Part shown: in pieces, positions 31,349-52,568 of the stretch
Layout: each line of letters begins with the position of its first letter
How positions within the stretch are numbered: position 1 is the first letter of the stretch
Notes under the pieces: generated by a model
What the model was told of the DNA's origin: nothing
Databases searched by the model: none
What the model saw: the letters and a program-made list of their open reading frames with translations, nothing else
Position numbers and translations under genes: made by a program
Origin: Zootoca vivipara
Taxonomy: Eukaryota
Reading direction: 5' to 3'
Assembly (NCBI RefSeq): GCF_963506605.1
Contig: NC_083285.1
Location: 70,990,001-71,054,000, forward strand
DNA: 64,000 bases

Positions 31349-31568
31349 AGAAGAAGAAGAGTTTGGATTTGATATCCCGCTTTATCACTACCCGAAGGAG
31401 TCTCAAAGCGGCTAACAATCTCCTTTCCCCTCCTCCCCCACAACAGACACCCTGTGAGGTGGGTGGGGCTGAGAGACTTCAGAGAAGTGTGACTAGCCCA
31501 AGGTCACCCAGCAGCTGCATGTGCAGGAGCGGAGTCTACCGCTCTTAACCACTACACCACACTGGCTC
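31349..31568 (-). mobile_element. tRNA-derived squamate SINE
   Basis: Minus strand starts GAGCCAGTGTGGTGTAGTGGTTAAGAG (A-box); (TTC)n tail; imperfect TSD CTTCTGA(A)GAG. Confidence 0.8.
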
Positions 31569-31739
31569 TTCTGAGAGTTGTAAGCAAAGAACAAAGCACT
31601 TGCAGTTAAAATTACGACACACAAGGACTTCCAGTCTACCGCCAGTGCTGATCGGTGAGGAATCCGCAAGCTCCGAGGTTCCTGGCGCTGTGAGGGTGGG
31701 GTGGGGGAGCCGCAAGAGCAATGCGGCCCCCCAGAAGAA

Positions 31740-34700
31740 CCCCAAATCATTACCTGGCATGTAGAACACTTGACCTGGTCCCTTCCTAATACACTCTCTT
31801 GCATGACGTAACCTCATCTGCAAGAACCTGGACCTTTGCTTGCAACCCTCTGAAGCTAGCAAATCCAAACAGGAAATGTTGTCCTGATACACCTGTACTG
31901 GACAAGTCACCTTGACTTTGACATCCTGAAACAGTTGCATCAACCACTCGCAATCTGTGAGCGAGAATGAGAGAGTGTTGAGTTCCGCTGCATAGGAACT
32001 CAGACTCACTATTGTTTGCTCCTTGCACATCCAGCCAACCAGACAGTGGTTGTACAAGTAGCAAACGCCAGAAGAGCTTGTGCCACCTGTGGCATCACCT
32101 CCGAAACTTGCATCTGCAAAAATCTCAAGACCTCCAGTCTTTTGACCTGTCAACTTCAGCCTGTAGTGTATAGTGCTTCGAAGATAGCAACCTATGCGCT
32201 GCAGATCTTGCCAATCCTTAACAGTAGGATTGTTTGCATGCCTGCCAAGCAAATCACAGCTTGCAGCAATGTCAGGTCTTGAACATTTTGCAATGAAGCA
32301 TAGCTTGCCTAGAACACATCTATACAAAGTGGTGTCAGAAAATGCTTCTGCGTTATCATCTCCCTGATAACCTGGCACCATAGGTGTGTCTACAGGATTT
32401 CCATCATCCAAATCCATCCTGTTCAACACCTCTGTAATTTCCTGGGTCTGGTGCACCAGAAAACTACCTTCTTTGTCTTTCTCAACTTCCAGAGAAAGAT
32501 GGTTGGAAACTTCACCAAGATCCACCATGGTGTAGTGTTCCTGCAACTTAGCAAGTGTACGCTGGTACAAATCCCTGTGTTTCCAGAAGATAAGCATTTC
32601 AGCATCATAACAAAAGCAATACAGTTTGTGCTCCCCCTCTTCCTTGACAAACACACATGAATCAGCAATAATTTGGTGAAAACCTAGAGAAAGCAACATC
32701 TCTGTTAGTGTTGTATCCCAACACCTGGCACTCTTCTTGAGACCAAACAGGGATTTCTTCAACTTGCAGACCATCCCTTGTGGTACGTGCATTCCTGCAG
32801 GTGGAAGTAAAAACAGATCCTCCTGCAAAATCCCAGTCAAAACATTTGCATCATTAGCATCCAATACAATATGTGATACATGCATTTTCTCCTCCGAAGC
32901 AATCTTGAGCAAAAGCTTTAAGCATTCATACTTCACATCGGGTGCAATAGTCTCAATGTTGTTTTCACCTTGAACCTGTGAAAAACCTGTTGCGACCAGT
33001 TTGGCTGTGTGCCTCACTACCTTGCCATGTTGGTCAGTTTCGGCCTTAAAGACCCACCTGCTGTTTACCAGCTTCATTCCTGGGACCATTTTGACCAGTT
33101 CCCAGGTCGGATTCCTATCTAAGGAATCAATCTCTGTTTTCATGGCAGTTAGCCATGGTTGAGCATCTTTTGAGGTCATTTCCTGAACCTCCTTGAAGCT
33201 TGCAGGTTCAAAAACCTTTTCTGAGCTACTAAGAACAGCATCAGCAGTTTTAGCAAACTCATCAGCAAATCTCTCAGGCTGTTTGCCTGTTGTGGCCCCT
33301 TCAGATTTGCAAACACTCATTTCCTCTTTCTCTGGAGAAAAATGACCAATGGTGAGCAGTGGTTCTCCCAATTCAGTGTCGGACTCAACTGCAGGTCTGA
33401 GTGAGGTTTCAACACCTTCGTAGCCTGCTGTATCACCAGCCACAGCAGTACCACTACCTCCCACTGAATTAGAACCACCCTGATCATCATCACCTGGATG
33501 AATTACATCCTCACTTGGGTGAATCACATCATTTGCATGAACCAGGAAAATTCCCCCACCTTCCTCCCACTTGGGATTGGTAGCACCACCTAGGTGAACC
33601 AGGGAAATTTCCTCCTTTACCACCCCCTTGGGATTGACATCACCATCTGGGTGAACCATGGAAATACCTTCCTTTTGCATCTTCTCTGGATTGGCACTGT
33701 GCAACAAGGGTGTAAGTCCCTGCTGCATTGATTTTCAAGAATTCCCAGCTCCCTCACACAAACCACCCTCCCAAGAACTGTTGGGACGTGAGAGATCCTT
33801 TTGAATTCGCTTCTCATCCAGGAAAGCATCTAGCTCCTGAGAAGTGAATTCACCTTTACTGGGACAGGAGCATTTCACTCCAATGGGATCGGCACTATCA
33901 TCACTCCTGATGTACCCCCCCCCCCTCACACTCCGAGGGATTCAGTTGACCATCTTGGTCATTTGCAACTTCATCCACTGAAAGTGTCATTTGATCAGCT
34001 AGATCAATATGAATCACTTCACAGGGTGTGGAAGTCTGTCTGCTAGAAAGCTTCCCATCATCATAGCTGCCAAGTTATCCCCTTTTTTAAGGGATTTTCC
34101 CTTATGCTGAATAGGCTTCCTCGCGAGAAAAGGGAAAACTTGGCAGCTATGCCCATCATCAGCAATTACATCATTGCAATCAGCAAAAGAATCACAGGGT
34201 TGAACCTTTAAACCCTCTCCATGCTCCTCCTTGGACACCTCCTGCAAACCCAGGTGACCATTGGTGTGATCAAAACCACCTGTAAGAAGAAGCTGATTAG
34301 TGTTAGCATCACAGGCAACTTCAGGCATATCAACCACATTTTCATCAACATAATCAAAAGTAAACACATATTGATTATCAACTCTTGGAGCATTCAGAAA
34401 TTCCTCATCGCCTTTCTTGATGAGACAGCTTCCATTTTCGAAAGAAACTCCATACCCTTCTTCAGACATCTGTGAAATGGAAAGCAAATTAATTTGTGCA
34501 TCTTGCACATACAAAACATCACATAGTGTCAAGTTCAGTCCTCCTATGTGAACATCTCCAGCTCCCTGCACATTTAAAAGTCCTTCACTAGACTTCACGA
34601 AACCATTCTGTGAAGAAAAGCAAGTAAACAAACGTCTGTCACTGCAAACGTGCTTCTGAATTGTGGAACTGACAAAAAACTTGCATTGAACTTTTCGTGC

Positions 34701-36086: not shown

Positions 36087-38899
36087 GTGGATAGGTGGCG
36101 AAAGAGTGGGAATAGGGTGAGGAGCAACAATGGGTAATTTTCTGATTGATTAAGATGATCCGAAACTGGAACTTTTTATGGAGCTGGTTGATACATCTGG
36201 GAGATCCGGAGTCCAGGGGAAGGGGGATAGAATTAGATAAATGTGGTTAAAGGTTATTATGATAGAAGAAATAGTATTTGAATGTATGGGGGAAAATTTG
36301 GGGTATAAATTGTGAGGCTAAAGGAAGAATTAGAGATGGATGGGAAAATAAATTTAGATTTGGATTAATTAATGAATTAATGGTGAGGATAGTTGATGTT
36401 TTTTCTTTCTTTGTGTAGATTAGAATTGGTTGTGAAATAATGGAAAAAATGTGTTAGAATGATTTAAGATGATAAAGTAAAATTGCTTTATTTAGATTGA
36501 ATAAATGGACCCAGTGTGGGGGGACTCAAGGAAGTCCACAATGTCAAGTTAATGTAATGAATTGATATGTTTTTTCTTTTTCTTTTTTGATTATGTTTTA
36601 TTTTTGCTTTTTGTTTTTGTTTTTATGTTGAAATGTTTGAAAATCAATAAATATTATTTGAAAAATAAAAAAATATAAAAATAAAATTACGACATGCAAG
36701 GGAATCTGTTCAGAACGGACTCGTAACAGTGTCCTATATGCCAGGAGCTGAGATGCCTGCTGATTTGTTGTCCAAGATCGTTCCCAGGGAACGACACTGT
36801 ACCTATGTACAGAAACTGGGACTGTACTAACACACTGCCCAGTGATATATATATATATATATATAGAAAGGGGGAGGAGGTTAGGTTTCTATTCCTCTCA
36901 CTCACGGGAGCGGATGTTTGCTGTATTCTGTTTCCATTTGTTTGTTTTTCTTCGGACTTCTCTCAGCGAGAGGAGACATGTTTTCTTTCGTTCTGCCTTA
37001 CGCTTAATAAAGTAGTTTTTAGTACACAACCTCAGCCTGGATCCGTCTGCGTTTTATCTCTGCTGGACTCTGAATATGCACTCAGTGTCTCCAAGACATG
37101 GGTCATAATAAATCGTCGGGAAAGGGCTGTCGGAACTCCCTAGAGCTGCACGCTGGACGCTGACGGGAGAGATGGGCTGGATTCGTTCCTGCATTATGCC
37201 TGGGGATCGTTCTTGCCCCCGGCTGACCCAACAAATTCAACCATTCCATATGGAAATAGATGTTTACTATAATCTTGTTTTTATTGCATCAGCTCAATGA
37301 TTAATACCCTTTGTGGGAAGAAACGCTGATTGTACCGGAAAAGTGTCCAGGGGTTGACTCATGAGTTGACATTGCTTCTATCAAATACATGAGTGATTGC
37401 AAAGAAAAAGAAAATGAGATTTCTCAGTTTGCTTGTTTAGACTCCTTGTTGTGGAGCGGCTGCCCTTGGTGATATATTCTTGTACAACTTCGCATTTTGC
37501 AAGATTCCTAGCAGGTGCGCCAGAAAGTGGCGCCAGAATCAGGGCCGCCGTTGCCCAGCCCTGCTCGGGGGGGGGGAGAGCAAGCAAGGAGGTGTCTTCC
37601 CAGCTGAGTCAGCTGCTTTTCCCACAGAACATCCGGTCCTGGGTGAAGGACAAGTCTGAGGTTGAGGTGGTCGACCTGGTCCTGAAGCTCCAGGAGAAGC
37701 TGGTAAGCAGGATGCTCCCAAGTGAGTTGTGCCTGATGGGTGGAAGGTGCTCAGATCAGGGCTCTCTTCTCGAGGGAGCAGAGCGGAGCCTGGCTGGCTG
37801 GCTGGCCCCTCCAGACTGTGGCCAGGCCTGTTTCAGCCTTGGGAATCCCCTAAGGAAATCTCAGCCCCAGGTGAGAGCAGAGGAGCCCCAGGTGAGAGCA
37901 GAGGGCAGACGGGGGACCAAAGTGAGACAAACTGCCCCAGGAACACGGTGTGTCCCCCCCACCAGAGTTACTGCCCCTCCCCAACTCCCCCCCCCAATGC
38001 TTTATGGCATTTATTAATTAGCACTCATAAATCCTGTTTTATGAATGGGAAAACTGTAGATATTTAAATAAAATAGTTTATTAATGAATAGAACTCAAGC
38101 CAAAGGTCACAGAATCATACACAGAGTGATTCAAAGCGGTTCTGAGTAACAGTGTCTGAGCGCTTCATGGCTGCAGCCGTAATCCCAGAGTCCTGGGACA
38201 GAACACAAACTCTCAATGGGCAATAATACAATGGGCTGACAATGGAGGGAAGGATCCTTATCAGCCCAGGAAGAAACCCTTGAGCAGGAGACTAAGTGAC
38301 TGGATTGGGGTGAAGGTTATTTGTGACGCCAAAGGGATGTGCTCATGTTTGCCCAAAGGATGACAGATGAGCAGAGGAGAGGGGAGACTTGCCACCCACA
38401 GATCTCTTGGAGACAAGGCAAGGACCTGTGATGCGTTGCAACATTTGGACAGTGCTTTTTGGGAGTGGATCTCTGGGCAAAAGGCAAACTTTGTTGGAGG
38501 CTGCTTCTTCTTTTGCTGTTCCAGAAGTAGGACGCTCGCTGTGACAAAAATAAAGATTGGGCCTCCTAGTCGCCTTGCTTTTCATATACCTGGTTGCATT
38601 TTCTGGCTTTGCTCTGACCGTCACGTGGCCCCCAGGGGATCGTGAGACCCCAGAGCAAGGGGGGGGGGGTCCCGCGACAACAATCTCCTGATTTTCCCAC
38701 GACACTTGCAAGCCCCTGTAGCATGTAGAGCGCACGGCTCATACACGTCATACACGTGATCCTGCTGGCTGCTGGGCTAATCCGGTCACTGACAGAAGTC
38801 CTGAGCAAAATACCCTTACAAAAAAACCAGAGGTGGAGGGACTTGTAATGCAGTTTTGCAGCACTCTGTTCTTGGGAGACCCCGCCTTCCCCTCTTTCG

Positions 38900-41800
38900 T
38901 CAGCCCTCCCTGCAAATGGCCAGGGAGTCCTCGTAAAAGGCTTTCTGGTCCAGGTGGCCCAGGAGGGGCATCTGCTCCCCGGTCACCTCCCGGCGGAAGT
39001 TCTGCCGGAGCCATCCGTAGACCAGGCTGTGCAAGAAGCCTTGCAGGGAGATGGTCAGGGCCTGCAGAAAGGGAGAAGAGGGGGCATTACGCTTACGGGG
39101 GGGGGACGCGAAATCCAGCCGCTTCAGCATCTCAAGGGGAGACGGGTGTGCTCTGGCAGAGCAAGGGGAGGCTGGGGAGGGAAAAAACTCCACAGGGCCC
39201 CAAGATCCAGAGAGTTGAGACCCCACTTGCAATCCTGCAATCGCTCAAAGTGTCCAAGGCCTCCTCTGGTGGATTGCTCAGCTTCAGCAGATTGAAGAGG
39301 TGGGTACAGCTGCTTGCATGTCTGTGGCTGACCACCGCATGGCTCGGTTTGGCTAGATCAGTGGTTTTCAACCAGTGTGCCGTGGCACCCTGGGGCGCCT
39401 TGAATGATGGGCAGGGGTGCTGCGGGCAGCACTGGCCTCTCTCCTTCTCCCCTTCCCTCCCTCCTCTGATGCCCTCTCACGTCTCTGCCTGCCAAAGTCT
39501 TGCACAGTTGTTTGTTGCAGCAGCCCTGGCTATAAGCTCCGCAGGCGAAGGGTGCCTCTAGGGCTGGCCAGGGGCTGCATCCCAGGCCCCTATGGGGTAG
39601 TGTGAGGAGACACCTCTTATTGGGGCAGGAGGGGGCAGCTCAGAGACCAGGGGCGGCAGCTTCGACTGCCCAGAGGGGGGGGGGGAGGCTGAGGGAACAT
39701 GCCACAAGGGAGGCTGTTTGAAAAAGGTGAGGGGCTGCCAGCTCTGCAGGAAAGGGGCGACATAACTGGGAGCCCCTCCCTTCGCCAGCACTGAAGTCCA
39801 GGAGCCGGTGCAAGACCAGTGCATTTGCTTCAGGCCCTCCAAGACACGCCCCCCCCCCGGTCACTCACCATAGCCACGTAGAGAGGGAAGAGGGAGGTCG
39901 GCTGGAGGCTGGTGAAGGAGAGCAGGCACAGGGAGAAGGCTGAGGGGGAAGGAGAGCAGGAGGAGAGCCCCCATCACTTTTCCTGGCCAAGGTCACCAGG
40001 CTGCCGCCTGAGGGATCAGAGCCTCTCCCCACCCCCGGCAGCCCAAAGAATAATAATAATAATAGTAATAATTTATTATTCATACCCCGCCCATCTGGCT
40101 GGGTTTCCCCAGCCACTCTGGGTGGCTTCCAACCAAATGTTTAAAACCAGTACAGCATCAAACATTAAAAACTTCCCTAAACAGGGCCGCCTTCAGTTGT
40201 CTTCTAAAAGTAAAATAATTGCTTATTGCGTCTGTATCTGATTTGGGGATCCACCCCAAGGGTGGGGATTGGTTGTTAGACAATGGGTCTTGATTCTTCT
40301 CGACTCATTCAATAAACCTGGAGGTAAGTGATGAGGCTTAACTTGGGGGGGGGGGGTTCTTCATCCTTTGGTCTGCCTTTTTTCTCTCCAAGATGCCTTG
40401 AGTCTGGATTTCCACGTCTTCAGACCCAAGCATTGCAACGTAGGAGGCAAGGGACCCCAAAGCAGTCCCTGGGCAGACCTACCTCGCAGGGGAGGCAGAA
40501 GCTAGAGGAGGAGGCAAGGTTCCTAGGCCACTCACCTGGCATCCAGCAGACCAGGAAGACCAGCTGGAAGAAGCAGGCGCTGCGGGTGGTGCGGGTTCTG
40601 CCGGCACAGCCGTCACTCTCCGGAGCTGGCAGGTTCAGAGGGGGGCCACCTCTCTGCCTGCGGCGGCACCAGCACTTCACCCTGCAGTAGAGGACCTGGC
40701 CAGGGGCAGCGGGAGGCAGCCATTAGGTGCTAGGAAAGGGGCAGGACTCAGACCATTGGAATGCCCATTCGCCCGGCCAATGACAGCAGGTCATTTGGTC
40801 AGCCAGTGAATGGCCCTCAGACCGGGCTCCTTTTTTAGCCGAGTAAAATACTTTTGACGTATTTGCTGCCTGCATTGAAATGTAAGTAAACCATTTTTGT
40901 TTTTACTAAAATGTGCAGCTTATTCCTAGCAAAAGGGACAAAGAGGGGAAAGGTCAGCAGACCACAACGGGGGGGGGCTATTGGGTTGTTGTTTTTATCT
41001 TCATTGTGTATTTTGTGATTTTATATCTTGATTTTATTCTGTGAACCGCCCTGAGACTCCTGGGTAAAGGGCTGTATATAAATTCAATACATAATAAAAT
41101 AATAAATAATAAAATAAACAGGCCACAGTGGATGCCCACACTAAGACGGACGGACAGACGGACACATACTTACTGTGCAGCAGAAAACAACCAGAGAGAT
41201 GAAGACGAGGAAGAAGATCTTGCCTTCTTTGCCAGAGTCCTTCCTGCCTGTGTACTAGGAGGAGGGGGGGAAGCTCCTCAGTAAGGAGCTCCTCAACACT
41301 GGCACGGTGGGGTCCAAGGGTCAGCTCCCCATGGTAACAGGCCCCGTGGCCCTTCTGCAGGTGTTCAGGGAAGAACCTCTGAAGCCCACGGGGGCACTTT
41401 GCCGACCCCCATTGGGGCTCACCTGCCCAGGCAGACAGGAGGGTCTCCCAAAATCACATCACCCTCTATTTTGGGGGGCAGCGAGTTCCTGCTCTCCTGT
41501 GACAGGAGAGATGCTGGTAGGAGGGATGCTGGGAAGAGGCTGGAAATGGAAGAGGAACAAACCTCCCCCAGTTCAACCAGAGTTTCAGGGATCTTGGGGT
41601 TAGATTGGATGATCCTTGGGATCCCTTGAGACTAGCGCCATGCCAATATCTGGGCAATATCACCACCTGAGCAGGAGGTGAAGGAGGCAGAGTTTGGGGC
41701 GGCCGTCTGGTCCTCCAGGGGAGCTGAGGGGGCAGCTGGTTTTACAACACCACAAACCTGCTGTTGCTGTGGGGCCCTTCGCCCAGAACTAAGGCACCTT

Positions 41801-44800
41801 GTGCCCCTAAAGGATGGGGATGGGGTCCAAGAAAGGGCCACCCCAGAGCAACAGGGAGAGGAAGCAGCTGATGGAGGAAGCACTGGGGGGGGGGCGCAGT
41901 ACCTTGTAGCAGGTGTCTTGCGAGTGATGGATGAGGACCAGGCAGCTGGAAGGAAAGTGGGAGGGTTTGGCTAGCTGGACACAAAAGACCACCCTCCGTT
42001 TCAAAATCCTACACCAGCCCAAGGGAGAGGAAGAGGGGGAGGTTCTACCTGGAGCAGTAGAGGCCGTAGGACCCTTGTGAGCGGTTGCCAGCCTGTAACG
42101 CCACCGGGGGGATGGTCCAGGGTGCCACATCTCTCAGGGACGAGCCTCGCATCACCAGCAGGACCACAAAGACCAGGAAAGGGAGCAGCCTTGATTGCGT
42201 TGGGGGCAGGGAGAAGACACTGGGTGGAAGCAGATGGCTCAGAGCCACTGGGGCTGAGAGGCGGCTTCCCCTTGTGTGGCCTCCAAGGGCCAAGAGGCCC
42301 CCCCCCATACATCAGGGAGGAAAGTGTGGCAGGACAGTTGCACCTACCAGGCCAAGAGACGGGGCAGATTTGTTTGGAGTCTCTCGTTGAACCTGCCGCT
42401 CTCCTCCTTGGAGGGAAACAGAGACGGCAGGTGAGAGGCAAACACCCATCGGAAATCGCCCGTGTGACGTCCTCCTTTCCCCTGCTTGTGTCTCCCCCAG
42501 GTGCCCCCCAGCCGCTTGCGCCTCCCCCAACTGGGCTGGGGCCTCTGCCAGAGCCTTTCCCAGCCAGAGCACCTTGGGCACCCATGGGGGGAGTCCTGAG
42601 AAGCCCCCCTCTATGGAGCCAGGCCCTAGAAGGAACAGCCCAAGTCCTTGCAGACCCCCCCCCCTCTCCAAGGCTGGTCAGCACCCCACGGGTACAGCCT
42701 TGCCCAGGCTGGTGCCCCCCAGGCAAGTTGGACTACAACTCCCATCAGCGCCAGCCGGCAGGGTGCCTGTGGCTCAAAAAACCTGGAGGGCCCCAGCTGA
42801 AGTCCAGGAACTCTCATTGTCAATGGGTAGAAGAAGCCTCACAGTTGGTGAGGAGACCCTCCGCCCCCTTAGCTGTGATTGAGGCATTGCAAGGGGCTGG
42901 GCTAGGTGACTCTTGGGGTCCCTTCTAAGCTCTCAGAGGCCAGGCAGGGACCCTGAGCTCTTCCTACCTCCAGCAGGGCAGAGGAAGGGGCCTCCCTCCA
43001 GCCCCCCAGAGTTCGCTTCACTTCGTAGGCATAGACGACGACCACCAGCAGAGAAATGGCGTAGAACATCTGGGGAGAGGGAGGCAAAGCAAGGGCAGGT
43101 GAGCGCCGAGAGGTGCCTGGCAGGGGACAGAGGGGGCCAAGCTAGCTCTGGCACAAGGCAGGGGGTGCCCTGACCTGGGCAGGGCTGCTTGAGCTGGTTC
43201 CAGAGCCAGGAGGCTGCCCCCTCCATCTGTCCATCTGCGCAGGAACTGGCAGGACTCACTTGGGTCAAGCTCTTGGCAAGGGGGGCAGCCATGAGACCCC
43301 AGGAAGGGGTGGCAGAGCACCTGCCTTGCAAGCAGAAGGTCCTGGGTTCAAATCCTGGGGAGCCATGGCTGCCAGTCAGGGCAGGTAATTCTGAGTTGGC
43401 TCAGTGCAAGGCAGCTGGCTGCATTCCATGCCACCCACGTGCCCCTGCCAGCTCTGCCATGGAGGCCGGGCAGAACGACGGCTGCCTTACCAGACCCAGC
43501 ATCAGCAGGTAGGGACAGGCTTGGTAGGCCGAGACGAAGAGACGCTGCGGAAGGAGCTGGATGGCAGCTGCGGAGAGGAGGGCCGAGGCACCCAGGAGAT
43601 CCGCCAGGGAGAGGAGGAAGAGCGGGCAGAGCTGGGGGGAGAGCGAGGGGTCAGGGTTAGCACCCCAAACCAGCAACCAGCAGGACCCCTCTGCCCCCTG
43701 GCACCCAGAGCGCACCCTCTGGATAATCAAGGGGGCTCAAAGGCCAGGGAGGCCAGGGAGCCCCCGCTTCTCTTCTCAGAACACAATGCACCCCGTTCTC
43801 AGAGCTCAGCCTCTGCACAATCCAGACATCTGGGGAAAAGCTCGACAACTTCTCTGTCCGGATTTTCACTTTTTGAAATACGGCAACCCTAACCCTTCAA
43901 AGGCTCCCCCCCCCCCGAGTTGAGCAGGATGGAGAGCTGGGGGGGGGGACGACTCCCAGATTGCTCTGAGCCAACCCTCTTGGAGGCTGTTCTCAAGTGC
44001 TCCCAGGGGGCTCCTGTAGAAGGATGCCCGGGGGTGGGGGGGCGGAGCATGGGGGGGGGCTGCTTGCTTTCAAACCCAAGGATTGTCAGAAACCCCACCC
44101 TGGCAGACCTGCTCCTGACAGCATCGCCTTCGGAGGAGGGAGGCAGCCACAATGGAACCGCTGCCCAGGAGGCTGCAAGACAAAGGTGGCCAGCAGTCAG
44201 CTTAGGAGAGGGGGACCCCCACCACACCCCACACCCCCCAGCTCCCCCTGCCATGGGCTTCCCATCGCCTGGCCTGTCACGTCCTGGGGAGGGAGGCCGT
44301 CTGCTCCCCCTTTCCTCCAAATTTGGATTTGGAGAGGAGCTGCTTGGAGTCCTATGCTCTGCCCTCAACTGCAGCTGTCAGATGCGCCCGACACCCTCGG
44401 GTGCCTCCAGGGAAGGCGGGTGAGGGTGGGTGCCAAGGCAAGCAGAGACTCTGCAGGCGAGTAGCCGGGACCCACCCAGGCAAAGGGCACAGCCTGGGGG
44501 TGGGTGGGGTAGGTGCCCTTGCTCACCCCCTGCCATCAAAGCCCCCACCCCCCGAAAGCTGCCTGGATTCCCTGCAACCCACAGAGTGTGGGACTGGAGA
44601 TCCCGCCAGGAGGAGGGCAACAGGGTCAGGCTGCTCCCCTTGTTCTTGGAGGGCGGAGAAAGAAGAGGACTTGCTGGAGGGAAGGTGGGAGGGAAAGGTG
44701 GTCTTTGGCCACTCACCTGAGAGCCAGGGCAACCAGGTAGACCCACGCCAAGGCCAAGACCTAGAGGTTGCAGGCAAGAGGTCTTGGTTAGGAGGTGCCC

Positions 44801-45440
44801 CCACACAAGCCCACCAGTCAAGGTGTGTCTAGAGTAGACGGCTGAGAGTCTCCCCCCCTTTCCAGTTTGCTGTTCCCTGTAAGTCACCAGATATCCCTGA
44901 TGAGGGCCCCAGGGTGGGGTGGGGGTCCCACCAGGATGGGGGCCAAGCCCTGAGGCCACCTCAGCCCCACAGCATCCGGTCTCTCGCCTCTGCCTGTTTC
45001 CACGTGCCAAGAGATGCCAAGCCAGAGGAAGACACAAATGGGGTGGGGGTGGTGCCCCCCCCCACAGCTCCTGCCCGCTCTTGCCCTGGGAAACTGCTTA
45101 GGTCAGGCCAAGAGCAGAAACACAGGAAGTCCCTGCGGCTAACAGATTTCATTTCCCCCAGCAGGGAGACACCAGAGTGGCTAAACCAGGTATGCTTCCC
45201 CCCCCCGATCCCCCACTGGACACCTCTGGGCCCACCTGCTGGAGGACCCACCTTGCCCCCCCCAGGCTATGGGGCTGCCTTTCCCAGCTGGAGCCAGGCA
45301 GGCTAAGGCACGTCAGGCGGATTCCTCCCAAGCCAAGGGTGGGCGGAGGAGCAGGAGAATTGCCCGGGGTGGGTGGGGGTTGAATGGGGGGGTACCTTTT
45401 CGTCTGGAAGGGCAGTTCCACTCCTGCCTCGCTCGGCCAT
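38900..45440 (-). CDS. Orphan 7-transmembrane receptor-like protein, TMEM116/GPR157/cAR-like, 370 aa, 12 coding exons
   Basis: Exons 45440-45396, 44760-44717, 44172-44109, 43631-43491, 43069-42968, 42406-42348, 42189-42049, 41945-41903, 41254-41174, 40695-40536, 39939-39869, 39061-38900. All 11 introns GT-AG and phase-consistent, 1113 nt with no internal stop, Kozak CCACCATGG. Motifs LSLLGSGSIV, PLFLLSLADLL, FLVCWMPA, LQGFLHSLVYGW. Confidence 0.88.
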
Positions 45441-47922
45441 GGTGGGGCTACAGCTGGAGGGGCCACAGAGCATCGCCTGCCCTCCCTCCCTCTGGGCTCC
45501 TCCCCGCCAGCCGCTCAGCTGACTTTGTTTGCACAAGGTGTTTTCCTTGGGCTCAGGAGGAGGAGGGAGCCAAGCAGGAGATGCGCCACTTCATGCCCAA
45601 GTAGAGGAGGAGGAGGAGGAGGAGGAGTCTGGCACTCTTCCTGCACCCCAAAAGCAGCAGCAGAGTTAAGGCTGCGCCAGCCACCCCTCTTCCTGCCAGG
45701 GCAGAGCTGCAGTGCCCCCCTGGGGCCACAAAAAAACCCACCTTCACCTTCCTGTGGGGAGAAAGAACAGCTGGCAGCTCTCCCCCCCCCCCCCGCTAGC
45801 AGCAGCCCTGCCTCCGTTTCCCCTTGAGAGCAATCAAGGCACAGAATGCTTCAGACCAAACCTGAAGCAGTGGAGGGTTTTGGGAAGGGCAAAGGTTGCC
45901 CAGAGACTGAAAGCCTTACCTGGCACGTCCTGCCAAGCCCCCCAACCGCCTCCCTGCCCTGCTGTGTAGGGCTGCTGGACAGGTCTTCCGGGGAGCAGGC
46001 CCCGTGCAACAAATTGCCGGCCCACCCACAGAATAAAGACTTTTTCGCGTGCCAGAAGTGGGCCCGCCAGCCTGCCAAGGAAGAGGGGTCCTGCTTAGCC
46101 CCCTGCCCAGACACCCCTGCTCGCTGTCTCCAAGCGGGGAGCAGGCCAGCAATCCCTGGGCTCCCCCCTCTCCTCAGGCCAAACTGCCTTTTCCTGCTGC
46201 AGCTCTGTGGGCACCCGGCGGCAACCTCCCCAGGTCCGATCCTGCGCAGGGGAACACCTCGTGACATCACGGCAGGCCAGCCAATGGTCAGGGTGGGTCC
46301 TCAGATTCCCCAGAGGAGGCGAATCCCAAAGGATTGCAGGACGTCAGCCAGGGGCCTGCAGAGGGGTGAAGGATGAGGATCTCTTGGGCTCCAGCCCAAC
46401 CCCACAGTTGACCCATGGAAAGAGGCCCCTTTAGCCATGCTCATGTGTGTATGGGGGCAGCTACCCGTCACAGCTCTTGCTGCGGGTTTGAGGAGCATGA
46501 GGCAGCGGCTACTCAGGGGGCAGGAGGGAGGCCTTGCCTTTCTGGAAGCCAGATAACGCTGCTGAGCTTCTGGGCATCTAGTAGCAGGGAGTTCCACAGG
46601 TGCCCTGAGCGCTGCAGAAAAACCTTGGCCTGAAGCCAGGGAGAGGCATCATGCAACTGGGAGGTTACAGGGGATTGCAGAATCACAGAGGCAGAAAGGA
46701 CCCCCCCCCGAGTCATGTAGCCCAACCCCTGCAGTGCGGGAATCACAGCTGTTTTGCAAAAGTGCAATAGGGACAAAGCGCATTTCAAAACTGCCCTCAA
46801 GTGGCTGGTGTGTGTTTTCGAGCCCCTTTCTTTCACCTCCCTCGCAAATCCAAGAGCTGGCAATGTTTCCTTTCCGTTTCTTCCCTGCTTGACAAAGCCA
46901 GGCCACCAGCGTCAGGCGGCAGAGCGCAGCCCCCCACCCTGGACCCACAGAGCAGCAGGCCTGGCTATGGGGTGGCACCCGCAACGAGGCCTTCCCAATC
47001 CCAGGGATGGGCGTTCAGCCAGAGTATGGCCACTGGAGCTTGTCCCCTGCAAGATGCTCAAAGATTCATAGAACTTTAGAAAGGTACCCGTGCGGTCATC
47101 TAGCCCAACCCCCTGCAATGCAGGAATGCCAGCTTCCACTGCCTAAACCCTGGAGGGTTCTGCATGAGATTCAGATCCCGGGACATTGCCCAACTCTCTG
47201 CCCCCCCTGGCCCAGGACCTCAGGCAGGGAGGAGCTCTTCCCAGCCCCTGACACACACACACACACCCCGGCCCTCTCTAGTTGGGGATGTGGAGCGCTG
47301 AGCCCTCATCAGGCAAATCCGCGGGGTGCTCTGCCCCCCCACCCTCCTGCAATGGGGGCCAGCCTGGTCAGCATTGTCGATGCCACACGCCCCTTCCCCC
47401 CAAGGATGTGGAGTGGCTGGCAAGTCCCGGCCTCCTCTCCCTGAGTTCACCCAGCTCCCAAGGAGATGAAGCCCCTTTGCCCTGGAGAGGGGCCCTCTTC
47501 CTCTGCCCCCCTCAGCTCCACCCCTGGGTGCCACACCGTGCCGCATCATGCCCCCAAACACCAAGAGGCATTTGCCCACAGCACAGTCTCTGGTTGCTGG
47601 TCCTTTTTATTTGCAGATCACAAACCAAGTTGAAGCTTTAGAGGCAGGAAGAAGGAAACCCCAAAGGCAGCCTTCAACAATTCCCCCATTTGGCAAAAGA
47701 AGACACCCCCCCAAAAAAACCCCATTTGATTAAAAATCCCCATCTCCCAGATCGTGGTCCCTTTTAAGAAATGGCTCTTGGGCGGATCCTGGCAGCAGAA
47801 AGGCGCCAAGAGCCCACAGGTGCGGGAAGAGGAACTGCCAGCCCCGCTCCCTCCTCCTCCTCCTCCTTGGCACAGGGGCACCCTCTGGGCAAAGCAGCCA
47901 GCCCCACTGCAGCCCAGGGGGC

Positions 47923-50900
47923 TCACCTCTTCCCCGAGGGCCACCAGCTGCCTGCACCCCCCGCGTGGCTGAGCACGGCCTGCTTCTCCTCCGGGCTGAA
48001 ATGCAAGATAGTCAAGATGGCCGTCAGCGTCTGCTGCCGCCCCAGCAAGTCCGTCAGTGTCAGGAAGCGGTAGAAAATGTTCTTGAGGTACTCCAGGTTG
48101 GCGCCTTCCCTACCCTGGTCGCGAGCGCTCTTCTGCAGGCGGCCCTGCAGGCCGGAGACCTCCTCCCGGTGCCGCTCGGCCTCCTCCAGGAGCCTCTCCT
48201 GCAGCTGCCGTACAGCCGCCTCCAGGCTGCGCTTCTGCTTCTTCAGGGCCGAGGCCTCCACCTCCTTCCTGGCCAACTGCTCCGTGTACAGCAGGAAGGC
48301 CGGCTCCTTGGGCGCGGCCAGGTGCAAAGCCTGCGTGAGGGTCTCCAGGGAGACGTCGCCGCCCTCGTCCCCCTTCGGGTCCCCGCTCCGGGGCCCTCCC
48401 GCTTGGGCCAGGCCCTGCTTGGGCCCCTGGAGCCCGTAGTAAGGCAGCACCAGGGCCCTCAACTGCTCCAGCTCCTGGTCCTTCTCGGCCAGGACGGCCA
48501 GCGCCCGGTCGCGCTGCTTGTGCATCTCCTCCTCCAGGCGCAGGACCTTCTCCTGGAAGCCCAGCTGGCTCCTCTCCAGCTCCTGCCGGTGCTGCTGCTG
48601 CAGGCGGGCCGCCTCCTGGCGCCAGGCCTCTGCCTCCTGCTGACGCTGCCGGGCGCCCTCCTCGCAGGAGAGCCGCACGGAGACGTGCTTCTCCTTCAGC
48701 TCGGCCAGCTGCTCCTGCGCCGCCTCCAGCTCCTTGGCCAAGCTCCCGTCCTTGGCCGACTTGTTCTTGAGGACCACCTGGGCCCTCTGCTTGTACCTCT
48801 CAAACTCCTCCTTCAGCTGCTTCAGCTCCTGCTGGTAGTAGGCCGCCGTGGCCTTCTCGCCGTCCCCCGTCTCCGTGCCGCCCTTGGGAGGCTCCAGCCT
48901 GCAGAAGGCTTCGATCTCCCGGGCGGACGCCGGGCTGTCCTTGGTGGCCTCCTGCAGCATCTCCTTCAGCTTCTCCATGCGGTCCTTCAGGACGTTGACG
49001 TCCAGGCTGCTCCCCTCAAAGGCCACGACGTCCAGAGGGGAGCGGCCAGAGGCAGCCATGGCCAGGGTCTTGTTCTCCAGGTCCAGCTGGGCGATGCGGT
49101 CCTTCAGCTTCTGGATGGCCAGCTGGTCCTTCTGTTTGGCTTTCTCGTAGGTGCCCAGGAGCTCAGAGACCTCCGAGATCTGGGCCTCCAAGCCGGCCAC
49201 CCGCTGCTCCTCCAACTGGATCCGATCCTCCGCTTGAGCCGTCTGCGGGGGGAGGAGAAACAGAAGGACATGAGAAGAGGCTGCTGGACGAGGCCAGTGG
49301 GAATCCACCCAGCCTGGTTTTATTTTAAAACCTGCCACTTCTCCAAAGCTTTTGATTTCTTCTCATGCTTTCGGAACACTCTACCCAAGGCTGCTCCAAT
49401 GTCAACACCGGACCATCAGCAAACACCATGATTTTATGGACTCTACGTCCCACCTCAATCTCTTTAAGTTCCCTGTTTCTCCTTATATTCTGAAGCACAA
49501 TTTCTAATGCCATAACAAACAACAATGGAGATAAGGGACAACCTCGTCTTGTTCCTTTTTCTATTTGGCATTTGTCCGAAAGAATATTATTTATTAAAAT
49601 ATCTGAGGATTGATCAGTATAGATCTCTTCAATTCCAGCCAGGAAAGAATGACCTATTTCCATTTTCTCAAATACCTTAATCAAGAATGACCAAGAAATA
49701 CTATCAAAGGCTTTCTCCGCCTGCCTGAGAGAATCTCCAGTCTGGCCAGGAAGTGGGGAAGGAGCATCGCTTGGCTCTGCCAGGGAGTCACGCCACCAGC
49801 CTGGGCCAACCTGCTGCCCTCACAGAGGACGGGAGCTACTATCCAAAATATCTAGAGGCCACCAGGCTGACGAAGGCTGCTCCTCCCCTCCAAAGTCTCC
49901 ACGCTGGCATGGCGTCCACAGGCCTCAGCAAACACCTCCATGGAGGGGGTGCAGTCCGGCCAGTAAGACTGACCCCCACCCTGTGGTGAGCTGGAGAAAT
50001 AAAGGGACCATGTAGGTAAAGGAATGTGCCTGCTTTGGGGCTCCGCTCAGGAGGGAATCACAGACTTCTAGAACTGGAAGGGACCCCCAAGTCATGTAAT
50101 CCAAACCTCTGTAGTGCAAGAATCACAGTGCAAGAATCCCTGGCAGATGGGCCTCCAAGCTCTCCAAGGAAGCCAAATCCAGCCCCTTCCGCTCCCCGCC
50201 CTGTGCTCACCTTCCGCATCTCCTGCATCAGCTGCGCCTGGAAGTGGCTCCTCAAGCTGGCCGCCTCGGCCTGCAGCTCCTGCACCTGCGGGTCCGGCTG
50301 GGAGCTCTCCTCCCGCAGGGCCCTTAGCTCCCGCCTCAGCTCCTCCACCTCGCAGCCCAGCTGCCGGGCCTGGTGCTCAGCCGCCTCCGCCCGGTCTGCC
50401 ATGCCCGCCTTCCCGGCCAGGGCCTCGCGGGCTTCCTCCAGGCCCAGCTCCGCCTCCTGGCGCAGGGCACGCTCACTCTGGAGCAGGCGCTGCAGCTCCC
50501 GCAGCATGACGGCATGGTCGCCCTGCTCCTGCGCCCGGTCGTGCTGCTGCGCAATGAGGCGCGCCTTGACCTCGGCCAGCTGCTCCTGCGCCTCCTTGAC
50601 CTCGGCCTCCAGCCGGCTCCTCTCCTCCTCGGCTCTGCGGTTGGCGCTCTCCATTTCCTGCTTGGCCTTCTTCTTGTCGGCCTGGTAGGAGGCCTCCATC
50701 CGAGACTTCTCCTGCGTGACGGTGGCCAGGGCGCTGGTCAGCGTGGCCAGCTGAGTCTTCAGCTGCAGGACCCTCCTGTCCGACTCGCCAGCGCCCCCCG
50801 CAACCAGCTCCCCGCTGCCGGAGCTCACGCCACTGCTCTCGGAGCTGCTGGTCTCCTCCAGCTTCGAGGGAGAGGCTGCAGTCCCCACTGGCGCCGCCCC

Positions 50901-51254
50901 GTCTTCTGTGCCCACCAGGTCCCCCCTCACGCTGGCCAGGCTGGCAGCCGTCCCATGACTGTCCTCGCTGTGGACCGAGCTCTGGTCCTCGCTCAGGTCC
51001 GGGCTGGAGGAGCCGGCCACCCCCGGGGGCTGGGCCACCTCGCTGCCCAGGCCGGCATCCACCTCGTGGGAGACCGACAGGACCTTCAAGCTGGCCTCCA
51101 GCGCCTCCTTCTCCTTGAGAAGGCTCTTGTAGGCTCTCACCACGTCCTTCAGGCGCCCCTGGTACTGCAACAGTTGCTTCTTCTGCACCTCGATGGTCTC
51201 CTGCAGGTCCTTCTTGCTGGGGCCGCCCCCAAAGTTCATGCCAAACTTCTCCAT
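47923..51254 (-). CDS. GCC1: GRIP and coiled-coil domain-containing protein 1 (golgin GCC88), 787 aa
   Basis: Exons 51254-50211 (MEKFGMNFGGGPSKKDL...) and 49242-47923 (C-terminal GRIP: ANLEYLKNIFYRFL...ILTILHFSPEEK...SWWPSGKR); phase-0 GT-AG intron; minus-strand AATAAA at 47606-47611. Confidence 0.97.
49345..49720 (-). mobile_element. L1 RT fragment in the GCC1 intron
   Basis: KGTRRGCPLSPLLF...FADG. Confidence 0.85.
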
Positions 51255-52568
51255 GGCCCCGGGGGCTGGGCTGGCTCTGAGAGCTGCAAGGGAACACCAG
51301 GGCGTGAGAAGAGCCATGCAGCTGGTTCAGGCTGACCACCCGCCTCGTCCAGGATCCTGTCCCCACAGAGGCCCACCAGGTGCCCCGACGGGAGGCTAGC
51401 AGGCAGGGTTCATAACAAGAGCAAAAGAGCCTTCCTGTACCAAGTCAGACCTTCAGTACACTTTGGAACTCCCTGCCTATTGAGCTCAAGCAGACAAGGC
51501 TGCCCAAGGTGCTTAGAAAGTTGATGTGAATTTTAACCTGGTTCAGTATTTTAACTTTTTCTACCACAGAGCTGTAGAGTTGGAAGGGACCCCCAAGGGT
51601 CATCCAGTCCAACCCCATGAGATGCAGGAATCTCAGTTAAAACATGCATGACATTTGGTCGTCAAATTTTCCTGTCTTCTCTTTCGGTGAAACCCTGGTG
51701 TGTGTTTGTGTTTGTGTGTGTGTTTCCTACACTCAAGTGGTGCATAACTTTGGGAAAATAAACAAGCACAATTAGGCCATCTAGCTCAATACTGCCCACA
51801 CTGATGGATGGTCGTGTCTCTCCAGGATTTCAGGGCAGGTTCTGTCCCAGGTTTTCCTGGATATTCTGCCGGGGGTCGAAGCCGGGACTTCCTGCATGCC
51901 AGGCAGGTGCTCTCCCACATTCTGGAGGAACAGTTCCGAGGCAGGAGCAGGCAAGGAAGGGCTGCTGGACCTCATGGGGACCCTGAGGACCCCAAACGCA
52001 GCACAAATGCCAGCCAAACAATGACAGTTTGGGAAGCCATTCCAGCGCCACCAGGGCACTTAAAAGAGAAAACCCTCCCTCCCTTTTTTGGGGGGGACCT
52101 TGCACACACATGCAACTGCCTGGTCTCTCGGCGTCTGACCTGAACACCAGAGGCTTTTGCTACAGGGCTCTCCCCCAACTCGGAGAGGGGGGCATAAGGT
52201 GCTTTCTGCAGCAGCACCCACGCTTTGGACGGGGAGAGAATCTGTAAGCCCTACCCTGCCTCCTATTGCCGCCACTCCCCCTCCATGCAGTGCCAGATTT
52301 ACGTATAAGCTAAACAAGCTATAGTTTAGGGCCCCACTCTCTTGCCCCCCCCAATTAAAGGAACAAAACTGGATGTACATTTCCAAAATATAAGATTAAA
52401 ACATAAAAAATAAAACCTACATCCAGCAAGTGTTTTGTGTTGTGTAGGCTCCTGTGATGTAAGTCAAGGGCCCCGCCTGCTAGCCTGCTCCCTAAAATAT
52501 CACTGGTTTGCTCATTTCTACATATAGGGTGCCTACATTCTGCTCTTTATAATTATTTGCATCATATA

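What the first reader, a model, noticed from the sequence alone, without database searches (positions are those of the whole stretch)
38900..45440. Hidden intact 12-exon orphan 7TM receptor gene (TMEM116/cAR-like) immediately downstream of GCC1
Seen: 12 small exons splice by GT-AG into one 370-aa ORF: MAERGRSGTALPDEKVLALAWVYLVALALSLLGSGSIVAASLLRRRCCQEQLCPLFLLSLADLLGASALLSAAAIQLLPQRLFVSAYQACPYLLMLGLMFYAISLLVVVVYAYEVKRTLGGWREAPSSALLEEESGRFNERLQTNLPRLLAWLLPFLVFVVLLVMRGSSLRDVAPWTIPPVALQAGNRSQGSYGLYCSSCLVLIHHSQDTCYKYTGRKDSGKEGKIFFLVFISLVVFCCTVLYCRVKCWCRRRQRGGPPLNLPAPESDGCAGRTRTTRSACFFQLVFLVCWMPAFSLCLLSFTSLQPTSLFPLYVAMALTISLQGFLHSLVYGWLRQNFRREVTGEQMPLLGHLDQKAFYEDSLAICREG. It has seven hydrophobic segments, TM2 LxxxD, Cys at the top of TM3 and in ECL2, an NRS sequon in ECL2, TM6 CWxP, TM7 QGFxxSLVYG, and no DRY. 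Established: this motif set marks the Dictyostelium cAR / plant GCR1 / GPR157 / GPR143 / TMEM116 group, and I know of no such gene beside human GCC1. Inference: an uncharacterised TMEM116 paralog retained in reptiles and probably lost in mammals. I recall similar uncharacterised teleost models (possibly zebrafish si:dkey-30c15.2) but cannot verify this.
Basis: partly seen in the sequence, partly recalled or inferred. Interest (0 to 1): 0.85.

Follow-up and report, generated by a model that had tools for sequence, protein, structure and literature searches.

The report
Already-annotated TMEM116-like orphan receptor gene
This is a real, expressed 12-exon gene for an orphan seven-helix receptor related to TMEM116; it is already predicted in the public annotation of the common lizard and occurs in most bony vertebrates, though no mammalian copy turned up.

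Summary
Twelve minus-strand exons (45440 to 38900) have AG/GT borders and consistent phases and add up to a 1110-nt reading frame. Spliced contigs or RNA-seq reads of the same species support all 11 introns.

The gene is not hidden. Every exon translation is an exact, ordered piece of the RefSeq protein 'uncharacterized protein LOC118090886 isoform X2 [Zootoca vivipara]' (381 aa). That model differs only by starting 11 codons upstream.

Orthologues are annotated as 'TMEM116-like', 'si:dkey-30c15.2' or 'uncharacterized'. They occur in lizards, snakes, turtles, birds, salamanders, caecilians, lungfish, coelacanth, bichir, gar, paddlefish and teleosts, and their tree follows the species tree. No mammal appeared among about 200 named hits.

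The predicted fold is a GPCR: seven helices plus helix 8, Z about 20 to class A receptors. CWxP and the TM3-ECL2 cysteines are conserved and there is no DRY. Pfam gives only sub-threshold 7tm_1 and no cAMP-receptor match.

Seven of eight listed exonic variants are synonymous, so the frame is under constraint.

One question stays open: is this a separate paralogue of mammalian TMEM116 (favoured, because it sits beside GCC1 and not ERP29), or a diverged orthologue? I could not fetch a mammalian TMEM116 sequence.

Verdict: an ordinary annotated gene, modestly interesting as an unstudied orphan receptor with no mammalian copy found.

The parts
45396..45440 (-). RefSeq isoform X2 starts at an in-frame ATG at 45473 (context caggcgATGc), which adds 11 residues.
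   Evidence: The E1-E2 joint 44760|45396 is seen in an X2 contig that runs beyond 45479.
44717..44760 (-). Exon 2 (44 nt), start of TM1
   Evidence: Joints 44760|45396 and 44172|44717 in X2. Turtle GCC1-7TM chimeric models join at this exon's acceptor.
44109..44172 (-). Exon 3 (64 nt), rest of TM1 and ICL1
   Evidence: Joints in X2 and X1.
43491..43631 (-). Exon 4 (141 nt), TM2 (LSLAD), ECL1 and the top of TM3 with its conserved Cys
   Evidence: Joints 43631|44109 and 43069|43491 in X1.
42968..43069 (-). Exon 5 (102 nt), TM3 ending in YAYE (no DRY), and ICL2
   Evidence: Joint 42406|42968 in 4 raw RNA-seq reads of X12.
42348..42406 (-). Exon 6 (59 nt), ICL2 and the start of TM4
   Evidence: Joint 42189|42348 in X1 and in 2 reads of X12.
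42049..42189 (-). Exon 7 (141 nt), TM4 and ECL2 with the N-R-S sequon
41903..41945 (-). Exon 8 (43 nt), the ECL2 CSSC / LIH segment
   Evidence: Joints 41945|42049 and 41254|41903 in X1.
41174..41254 (-). Exon 9 (81 nt), TM5
   Evidence: Joint 40695|41174 in X1 and X2.
40536..40695 (-). Exon 10 (160 nt): end of TM5, variable ICL3, and TM6 with CWMP. An in-frame 9-nt deletion allele lies at 40581-40589.
39869..39939 (-). Exon 11 (71 nt): end of TM6, ECL3, start of TM7
   Evidence: Joint 39939|40536 in X1, X2 and X11.
38900..39061 (-). Exon 12, coding part (159 nt plus the stop): TM7 (SLQGFLHSLVYGW), helix 8 (RQNFRRE) and the conserved tail (PLL...KAFYEDSL)
   Evidence: The loose end at 39868 equals window 39031-39060.
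38010..38899 (-). 3' UTR of roughly 0.8-0.9 kb, with minus-strand AATAAA signals at 38082-38077 and 38015-38010
   Evidence: The 1524-nt X1 contig has 1107 nt before exon 10, which is about 870 nt beyond the stop codon. Poly(A) signals.
47923..51317 (-). Context: the upstream neighbour GCC1. It has two long coding ORFs, 50058-51317 and 47923-49338, the second with a C-terminal GRIP domain. A minus-strand AATAAA lies at about 47606.

Best explanation
The interval holds an intact, transcribed, correctly spliced protein-coding gene. It is the gene that RefSeq already lists as LOC118090886 of the common lizard Zootoca vivipara.

It encodes a protein of 370 aa, or 381 aa from the upstream ATG, with a GPCR fold: seven transmembrane helices plus an amphipathic helix 8. 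It belongs to an orthologous group annotated as 'TMEM116-like', 'si:dkey-30c15.2' or 'uncharacterized'. That group has been inherited vertically since the ancestor of bony vertebrates, and in sauropsids it lies just downstream of GCC1.

Shown here: gene structure, splicing, constraint on the reading frame, fold, family and taxonomic range.

Inferred: it works as a membrane receptor. The disulfide-braced extracellular face (TM3 Cys to ECL2 Cys, glycosylated ECL2) would sense an unknown ligand. The signal would pass through the conserved TM6 CWxP hinge and the TM7 SLVYGW / helix 8 NFR(R/Q)E region to an intracellular partner, most likely a heterotrimeric G protein. The conserved C-terminal PLL...AFY(D/E)xSL tail would serve sorting or partner binding.

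Most likely it is a separate, ancient paralogue of the ERP29-linked TMEM116 of mammals, and was lost or is unrecognisable in mammals.
For: Structure: 12 exons, all AG/GT, phases consistent.

Identity with RefSeq P0077 over every exon. The Lacerta agilis orthologue is 370 aa and 331 of 366 residues are identical.

Transcription and splicing: joints at all introns, from three studies of the same species label. Introns 5, 6 and 10 are also seen in raw RNA-seq reads.

Constraint:
- 7 of 8 listed exonic variants are synonymous, against a neutral synonymous fraction of 0.257 (P = 4.6e-4).
- The one indel is in frame.
- 24 columns are invariant and 31 more nearly invariant across 21 species, from teleosts to lizards.

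Fold: AF2 pTM 0.73 with TM cores at pLDDT 83-96. Foldseek gives E about 1e-5 to class A and B1 GPCRs. VIA-align gives Z 19-21 over residues 17-359. A profile search of PDB hits class A GPCRs at E about 1e-6.

Family and range. The tree is congruent with the species tree, needing 7 label changes, the minimum possible.

GCC1 linkage: a GRIP-domain ORF lies upstream on the same strand. The turtle 'GCC1 isoform X4' model is GCC1 exon 1 spliced to this gene's exon 2 onward, and a rattlesnake model is likewise named GCC1.

Non-syntenic with human TMEM116, which lies MAPKAPK5-TMEM116-ERP29-NAA25 on 12q (PMC12898128).
Against: - No ligand, G-protein coupling or localisation has been tested for any member.
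- The DRY and NPxxY motifs of class A are absent.
- No member reaches Pfam's 7tm_1 threshold. Only the lungfish member (P0008, 22.3 bits against a cutoff of 21) reaches that of GPR_Gpa2_C.
- Read support in the two true RNA-seq runs is thin: 4, 2 and 1 junction reads, from about 6% of each run. The two richest runs are only guessed to be RNA.
- Paralogy with TMEM116 is not demonstrated, because no mammalian or ERP29-linked TMEM116 sequence could be fetched for a tree. NCBI names some members plainly 'transmembrane protein 116' (teleosts, Microcaecilia).
- About four further exonic differences in run X1 were not itemised. If all were nonsynonymous, P rises to 0.017.
Confidence: 0.85

Rival explanations
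1. It is simply the orthologue of mammalian TMEM116. There would be one gene per genome. The mammalian copy would have moved from the GCC1 neighbourhood to the ERP29 neighbourhood, or the reverse, and evolved fast. In that case nothing was lost in mammals.
For: - NCBI and UniProt name many members 'transmembrane protein 116' without '-like' (teleosts, Microcaecilia, Gopherus evgoodei).
- The bichir annotation calls its member 'TM116 protein'.
- The Atlas's nearest clusters are named TMEM116.
- A 2026 preprint counts only two vertebrate genes in this lineage, GPR157 and TMEM116.
Against: - The position differs: GCC1 and a fascin-domain gene here, against MAPKAPK5/ERP29/NAA25 in human.
- An exhaustive HMMER search with exon 12 recovered teleost members at 47-55% identity. 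No mammalian protein appeared among the hits that could be named.
- The single-sequence search found amphibian members at 43-48% identity but no mammal.
- Most tetrapod members carry the '-like' suffix, which NCBI tends to give when another gene holds the orthologue name. That last point is my own knowledge, not tested here.
Confidence: 0.3
2. It has the GPCR fold but is not a G-protein-coupled signalling receptor. It could be an intracellular or organellar 7TM protein with a sensing or scaffolding role, as for the GPCR-like domain of LYCHOS/GPR155 or for GPR143.
For: - DRY and NPxxY are missing.
- The LYCHOS/GPR155 GPCR-like domain scores nearly as well as true GPCRs (Z 19.4-19.9).
- The Atlas places GPR143-like clusters at 0.94.
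- A review lists human TMEM116 at both the plasma membrane and the ER.
Against: - The CWxP hinge, the TM3-ECL2 cysteine pair, the ECL2 sequon and a helix 8 resembling that of class A receptors are all conserved.
- The best structural matches are G-protein-bound class A receptors.
- GPR157, a relative by motifs, is reported to signal through Gq (eLife paper).
Confidence: 0.3
3. It is a decaying or non-coding locus: a transcribed pseudogene whose open frame persists by chance.
For: - RNA-seq coverage is low.
- There is no CpG-island promoter.
- Unspliced contigs and a non-productive alternative acceptor at 40868 are present.
Against: - The frame stays open across 12 exons with all splice sites canonical.
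- The same 370-aa structure is kept in Lacerta agilis.
- Variants are 7:1 synonymous and the indel is in frame.
- Motifs are conserved out to teleosts.
Confidence: 0.03

Closest known systems
RefSeq LOC118090886 (Zootoca vivipara), LOC117053662 (Lacerta agilis), LOC114605315 (Podarcis muralis): 'uncharacterized protein'
   Same: It is the same gene. All 12 exon translations are letter-for-letter in LOC118090886 isoform X2. The L. agilis model is also 370 aa.
   Different: RefSeq isoform X2 starts 11 codons upstream, at ATG 45473. Other isoforms use alternative 3' exons. Nothing is known of function.
Vertebrate 'TMEM116-like' / zebrafish-type 'si:dkey-30c15.2' group
   Same: The window's gene belongs to this orthologous group. 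Profile E-values run from 1e-113 to 1e-175. C, CWxP, QG..S..Y.W, NF and the AFY..S tail are invariant. The tree follows the species tree.
   Different: Lacertid proteins have a shorter ICL3 and a variable ECL2. Squamate branches are long.
Mammalian TMEM116 (human 12q24.13, between MAPKAPK5 and ERP29)
   Same: It is the nearest named relative according to annotators and Atlas clusters. From my memory of the human sequence, ECL2 to TM7 and the tail look alike. That is a lead, not a test.
   Different: The chromosomal neighbourhood differs. It was not recovered by the exhaustive exon-12 search at E<=1e-3, although teleost members were. I could not align it here.
GPR157 / plant GCR1 / Dictyostelium cAR (class E-like receptors)
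   Same: The published GPR157 motifs are largely matched. For TM2, 'LLxxLSLxD' compares with 'PLFLLSLAD' here. For TM7, 'QGxxNxIxF' compares with 'QGFLHSLVY' here and 'QGFLNSIVY' in teleosts. Atlas similarity is 0.94. The fold search returns both class A and class B1 receptors.
   Different: No Pfam Dicty_CAR or 7tm_2 match in 0 of 21 members. The ECL2 'WCW' motif is replaced by 'CSSC(I/L)'.
Class A (rhodopsin-family) GPCRs, e.g. GPR3/GPR6, TAAR13, kappa-opioid and melatonin receptors
   Same: These are the best structural matches (Z 20-21, 250-280 residues aligned) and the best PDB sequence-profile matches (E about 1e-6). CWxP in TM6 and a helix 8 'NFRRE' are shared, as in the MT2 receptor.
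   Different: There is no DRY (YAYE instead) and no NPxxY (SLVYGW instead). Pfam 7tm_1 stays below its threshold: 17.7 bits for this protein and 29.2 at best in the family, against a cutoff of 30.5.

Membership tests
TMEM116-like / si:dkey-30c15.2 orthologous group | Full-length, high-scoring similarity to the group's members | tested here: met
   P0077 scores E = 1.9e-152 against the family profile. The lacertid query finds bird, turtle, snake and amphibian members at E 1e-60 to 1e-119.
TMEM116-like / si:dkey-30c15.2 orthologous group | The group's invariant residues: TM3 Cys, ECL2 Cys, CWxP, L.QG...S..Y.W.R..F, and the G....L / AF...S tail | tested here: met
   All 24 invariant columns of alignment A1 are, by definition, held by the window's protein, which is its first row.
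TMEM116-like / si:dkey-30c15.2 orthologous group | Placement in the gene tree at the species' expected position | tested here: met
   Zootoca pairs with Lacerta (100/100) inside squamates, inside sauropsids. The eight taxon labels need 7 changes, the minimum possible.
TMEM116-like / si:dkey-30c15.2 orthologous group | Linkage to GCC1 on the same strand (sauropsids) | tested here: met
   Window: a GRIP-domain ORF ends at 47923 and the 7TM gene starts at 45473/45440. The turtle and rattlesnake GCC1-named models contain the 7TM protein. Not examined in fishes or amphibians.
TMEM116 proper (mammalian gene) | Position between MAPKAPK5 and ERP29/NAA25 | tested here: not met
   The window's neighbours are GCC1 and a fascin-domain gene. 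The human gene order comes from PMC12898128.
TMEM116 proper (mammalian gene) | Groups with mammalian TMEM116 in a tree, to the exclusion of other genes of the same genome | not testable with these tools
cAMP-receptor / GPR157 group (Pfam Dicty_CAR PF05462, 7tm_2) | Match to the family HMM | tested here: not met
   0 of 21 members match at E<=0.1.
cAMP-receptor / GPR157 group (Pfam Dicty_CAR PF05462, 7tm_2) | Published GPR157 motifs: TM2 LLxxLSLxD, ECL2 WCW(I/V/L), TM7 QGxxNxIxF | tested here: inconclusive
   TM2 and TM7 are largely matched and ECL2 is not. Atlas feature similarity is 0.94, which is a lead only.
Rhodopsin-family class A GPCR (Pfam 7tm_1 PF00001) | HMM score at or above the gathering threshold (30.5 bits) | tested here: not met
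   17.7 bits for this protein. 15 of 21 members match weakly and the best scores 29.2 bits.
Rhodopsin-family class A GPCR (Pfam 7tm_1 PF00001) | E/DRY at the end of TM3 and NPxxY in TM7 | tested here: not met
   YAYE and SLVYGW stand at those positions.
GPCR fold (7TM plus helix 8) | Seven-helix bundle superposable on solved GPCRs over most of its length | tested here: met
   AF2 pTM 0.73. VIA-align Z 19-21, rmsd about 4 A over 250-280 residues. Foldseek probability 1.00.

The most novel reading that the evidence does not exclude
The GCC1-linked gene would represent a third, so far unrecognised vertebrate lineage of the GPR157/TMEM116 (GCR1-like) receptor group. It would be an ancient paralogue kept under purifying selection from ray-finned fishes to birds and lizards but lost in mammals. 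That would explain why it has escaped study. It would offer an orphan receptor, with a strongly conserved C-terminal tail motif, that can be tackled in zebrafish, chicken-relative or lizard models.
Probability: 0.55. Interest if true: 0.45.

Novelty: already known. Interest (0 to 1): 0.3.

Why it matters
As a gene model it adds nothing, because RefSeq already holds it.

What remains of interest is evolutionary and pharmacological. This is a well-conserved orphan 7TM receptor, present in nearly every bony-vertebrate class that turned up. It has no mammalian counterpart in sight and no paper on its function. One full-text search found only a 2013 newt transcriptome table that mentions a 'TMEM116-like' hit.

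If it is a distinct paralogue, current counts of this receptor lineage in vertebrates ('GPR157 and TMEM116 only') are one short. A receptor lost in mammals could then be studied in zebrafish.

Tried and rejected
- Exon-by-exon Pfam search of eight exon peptides gave nothing meaningful.
- Exon 12 against PDB sequences gave only a weak helix-8 match to the MT2 receptor.
- Exon 12 in the protein Atlas scored below 0.9, so it is not usable.
- The look-up of encoding contigs for the L. agilis orthologue, which I wanted for CDS-based dN/dS and synteny, was closed. No dN/dS between species was possible.
- I tried to fish out mammalian TMEM116 with a short C-terminal profile, so that the length filter would exclude full-length family members. 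It returned only fragments of the same family.
- Scan notes by the words TMEM116, ERP29 and NAA25 gave none. Notes near the place concern only Copia elements.
- Paper searches for chicken or duck synteny of TMEM116 found nothing decisive. The DF-1 chicken paper lists a 'TMEM116' probe but not which gene it is.
- A non-canonical joint 42384|42967 (CG..TA) in one X1 contig is treated as an assembly or alignment artefact. Raw reads give the canonical 42406|42968.
- The joined 370-aa protein was deliberately neither assembled nor searched.
Full report
**What is in the sequence.**
Reading the minus strand of 38800-45600 in three frames and checking borders by coordinates gives twelve exons:
- E1 45440-45396
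- E2 44760-44717
- E3 44172-44109
- E4 43631-43491
- E5 43069-42968
- E6 42406-42348
- E7 42189-42049
- E8 41945-41903
- E9 41254-41174
- E10 40695-40536
- E11 39939-39869
- E12 39061-38900

Each acceptor ends in AG after a pyrimidine-rich tract, and each donor begins with GT. The phases (0, 2, 0, 0, 0, 2, 2, 0, 0, 1, 0) carry over without a stop. The total is 1113 nt including the stop codon.

Exons were handled one by one by reference.

**It is already annotated.**
An exhaustive HMMER search with the last exon (53 aa) against 1.84 billion representative proteins gave 55 hits. The best is a 370-aa protein, XP_033017515 'uncharacterized protein LOC117053662 [Lacerta agilis]'.

Searching with that protein found 'uncharacterized protein LOC118090886 isoform X2 [Zootoca vivipara]' (P0077, 381 aa). 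All twelve whole-codon exon translations from the window are exact substrings of P0077. They are in order and contiguous, leaving single-residue gaps only where a codon is split.

So the window is Zootoca vivipara or something indistinguishable from it, and RefSeq holds exactly this exon structure. The only difference is the start. RefSeq uses an in-frame ATG at 45473 (context caggcgATGc). From here on P0077 served as the referenced whole protein.

**Transcription and splicing.**
Runs of the same species label were found, and four were laid on 39480-45479. The limit of 6000 letters excluded exon 12.

Joints with CT..AC ends on the + strand match introns 1 to 10 to the base, once the stated cut offsets are applied:
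- 44760|45396
- 44172|44717
- 43631|44109
- 43069|43491
- 42406|42968
- 42189|42348
- 41945|42049
- 41254|41903
- 40695|41174
- 39939|40536

They come from contigs of two runs from different studies (X1, X2). For introns 5, 6 and 10 they also come from raw reads of runs on record as RNA-seq (X11, X12).

Intron 11 appears as a loose end at 39868 in both X1 and X2. Its 30 letters equal window 39031-39060, which is the start of exon 12.

One X1 contig of 1524 nt runs from exon 7 through exon 12 and about 870 nt beyond. That agrees with AATAAA signals at 38082-38077 and 38015-38010.

Caveats:
- X1 and X2 are only guessed to be RNA, although intron-less contigs argue for cDNA.
- Raw-read support is thin: 4, 2 and 1 reads in about 6% of each run.
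- Unspliced contigs are present.
- An alternative acceptor at 40868 runs into a stop after 25 codons.

**Constraint.**
Eight exonic single-base differences between the window and these runs are itemised. Seven are synonymous and one changes Ser to Asn in the third intracellular loop.

With a synonymous-site fraction of 0.257 for this frame, seven or more of eight has P = 4.6e-4. If the roughly four differences that the tool did not itemise were all nonsynonymous, P would be 0.017. Transition bias is ignored in these figures.

X1 also carries a 9-nt, in-frame deletion at 40581-40589 in the same loop. L. agilis has a 3-residue gap in that region.

Between Zootoca and Lacerta, 331 of 366 compared residues are identical. 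The differences are concentrated in the N-terminus, ECL2, ICL3 and ECL3.

**Family and range.**
They are:
- lacertid, agamid and amphisbaenian lizards
- many snakes, turtles and birds
- salamanders and caecilians
- lungfish and coelacanth
- bichir, gar, paddlefish and sturgeon
- very many teleosts

They are called 'uncharacterized protein', 'transmembrane protein 116-like', 'transmembrane protein 116' or 'si:dkey-30c15.2'.

No mammal is among roughly 200 named hits. Frogs, crocodilians, galliform birds and cartilaginous fishes were also not seen, but the lists are capped, so absence is not shown.

A maximum-likelihood tree of 37 members reproduces the species tree. Paddlefish plus teleosts fall on one side. 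Lungfish, amphibians, turtles, squamates and birds fall on the other, and the taxon labels need the minimum number of changes. The gene has therefore been inherited vertically since the bony-vertebrate ancestor. 'Retained in reptiles' understates its range.

**Neighbourhood.**
Upstream on the same strand lie two long ORFs of GCC1. ORF 47926-49338 carries a GRIP domain (E = 8.6e-16). ORF 50061-51317 is 67% identical to the first 350 residues of leatherback-turtle GCC1. An AATAAA lies about 315 nt after the GCC1 stop. A fascin-domain ORF follows at 56468.

The turtle protein named 'GCC1 isoform X4' is GCC1's first coding exon spliced onto this 7TM protein. The join sits at the exon 1/exon 2 boundary, around P0077 residue 25, with 57% identity over 358 residues. 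A rattlesnake model is similar. GCC1 linkage is therefore old in sauropsids.

Human TMEM116, by contrast, lies MAPKAPK5-TMEM116-ERP29-NAA25 on 12q (PMC12898128).

**Fold and motifs.**
AlphaFold2 on P0077 with a 21-species alignment gives pTM 0.73. It shows seven long helices with cores at pLDDT 83-96, a short helix 8, and disordered ECL2, ICL3 and tail.
- Foldseek against PDB returns only GPCRs, both class A and class B1, at E about 1e-5.
- VIA-align against 48,161 representative chains gives Z 19-21 to class A receptors (GPR6, GPR3, GALR1, P2Y4) over residues 17-359. The GPCR-like domain of LYCHOS/GPR155 reaches Z 19.4-19.9.
- A sequence profile of the family hits class A receptors in PDB at E about 1e-6.

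Invariant or nearly invariant residues, in P0077 numbering:
- L71 and D73 in TM2
- C101 at the top of TM3
- Y122-A123 in the YAYE that replaces DRY
- C208 and C211 in ECL2
- C301-W302-x-P304 in TM6
- S333-L334-Q335-G336, S340, Y343 and W345 in TM7
- R347, N349, F350 and R351 in helix 8
- G356, L361, A369-F370 and S374 in the tail

**Which known family.**
Pfam gives only sub-threshold 7tm_1 (15 of 21 members, best 29.2 bits against a cutoff of 30.5). GPR_Gpa2_C is matched in 6 of 21 members, and among the ten whose scores were shown only the lungfish member passes its cutoff (22.3 bits against 21). There is no match to Dicty_CAR, Ocular_alb or 7tm_2.

The protein Atlas puts TMEM116-named clusters first (0.97). 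GPR143-like, GPR157 and cAMP-receptor-like clusters follow at 0.94.

The GPR157 signature motifs published in eLife 2025 are largely matched in TM2 and TM7 and not matched in ECL2.

So 'TMEM116-like 7TM receptor with a GPCR fold' is supported. 'cAR-like' is plausible at superfamily level but failed the one formal test available.

**Paralogue or orthologue of TMEM116.**
This could not be settled. I could not obtain a mammalian or ERP29-linked TMEM116 sequence. The three word-index searches and the single exhaustive search returned only members of this group.

For paralogy:
- The chromosomal neighbourhood is different.
- Any mammalian protein failed to reach E<=1e-3 with exon 12, while teleost members at 47-55% identity did.
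- The L. agilis query recovered amphibian members (43-48% identity) but no mammal.
- Most tetrapod members carry the '-like' suffix.

Against paralogy:
- Many teleost members and one caecilian member are named plain 'TMEM116'.
- A 2026 preprint counts only GPR157 and TMEM116 in vertebrates.

I put paralogy at about 0.55-0.6.

**Likely mechanism (inferred).**
The protein has a glycosylated, disulfide-braced extracellular face, a conserved CWxP hinge, a TM7 Tyr at the position of the NPxxY tyrosine, and a class-A-like helix 8. These point to a conformationally switching receptor that signals to an intracellular partner, probably a G protein. The ligand is unknown. The conserved tail probably serves trafficking or partner binding. 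None of this has been tested in any species.

**Verdict.**
The gene is ordinary in the sense of being already annotated, so novelty as a 'hidden gene' is nil. A modest residual interest lies in an unstudied, conserved orphan receptor that mammals seem to lack.

Noticed in passing
window 40581-40589 (exon 10, ICL3): Run X1 carries an in-frame 9-nt deletion (3 codons) relative to the window, in the same loop where Lacerta agilis has a 3-residue gap. It also has five synonymous differences in this one exon. X1 may come from a divergent lineage of the species.
   Followed up: partly
window 45471-45473 and 45438-45440: There are two in-frame ATGs 33 nt apart. RefSeq isoform X2 uses the upstream one, giving 381 aa. 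The downstream one has the stronger Kozak context and is the start of the Lacerta and Podarcis models. An X2 contig extends beyond 45479, so both lie within the transcript.
   Followed up: partly
window 40696-40868: An alternative 3' splice site (joint 40869|41174 in X2) lengthens exon 10 by 173 nt and reaches a stop after 25 codons. It is a non-productive isoform, reminiscent of the truncated Podarcis isoform X3.
   Followed up: partly
window 40080-40279 (intron 10): This is a short interspersed repeat with very high depth in every RNA run (tens of thousands in X1) and many loose ends. It is a transcribed, high-copy element and not part of the gene's message.
   Followed up: no
P0010, P0009 (turtle and rattlesnake proteins): Public models named 'GCC1 isoform' are chimeras of GCC1's first coding exon with exons 2-12 of the 7TM gene. 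They are either read-through transcripts or annotation artefacts. They mislabel a receptor as a golgin.
   Followed up: partly
window 42384|42967: One X1 contig shows a non-canonical joint (CG..TA, skipping 582) where raw reads show the canonical 42406|42968. It is probably an assembly or alignment artefact.
   Followed up: no
window 7988-9973 (-), 24690-25166 (+), 29499-30530 (+): C2H2 zinc-finger arrays and a SCAN-domain exon lie on the far side of the receptor gene. In between are retroelement ORFs: an RT-like ORF at 12-911 and Copia-type pol at 31545-33728. An assembly gap or masked run lies at 19930-20065 and was left untouched.
   Followed up: partly
window 56468-57157 (+): An ORF with a fascin domain (E = 7e-9) lies beyond GCC1. 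From memory, the human order is GCC1-ARF5-FSCN3. I did not look for ARF5 exons in 51.5-56.4 kb.
   Followed up: no
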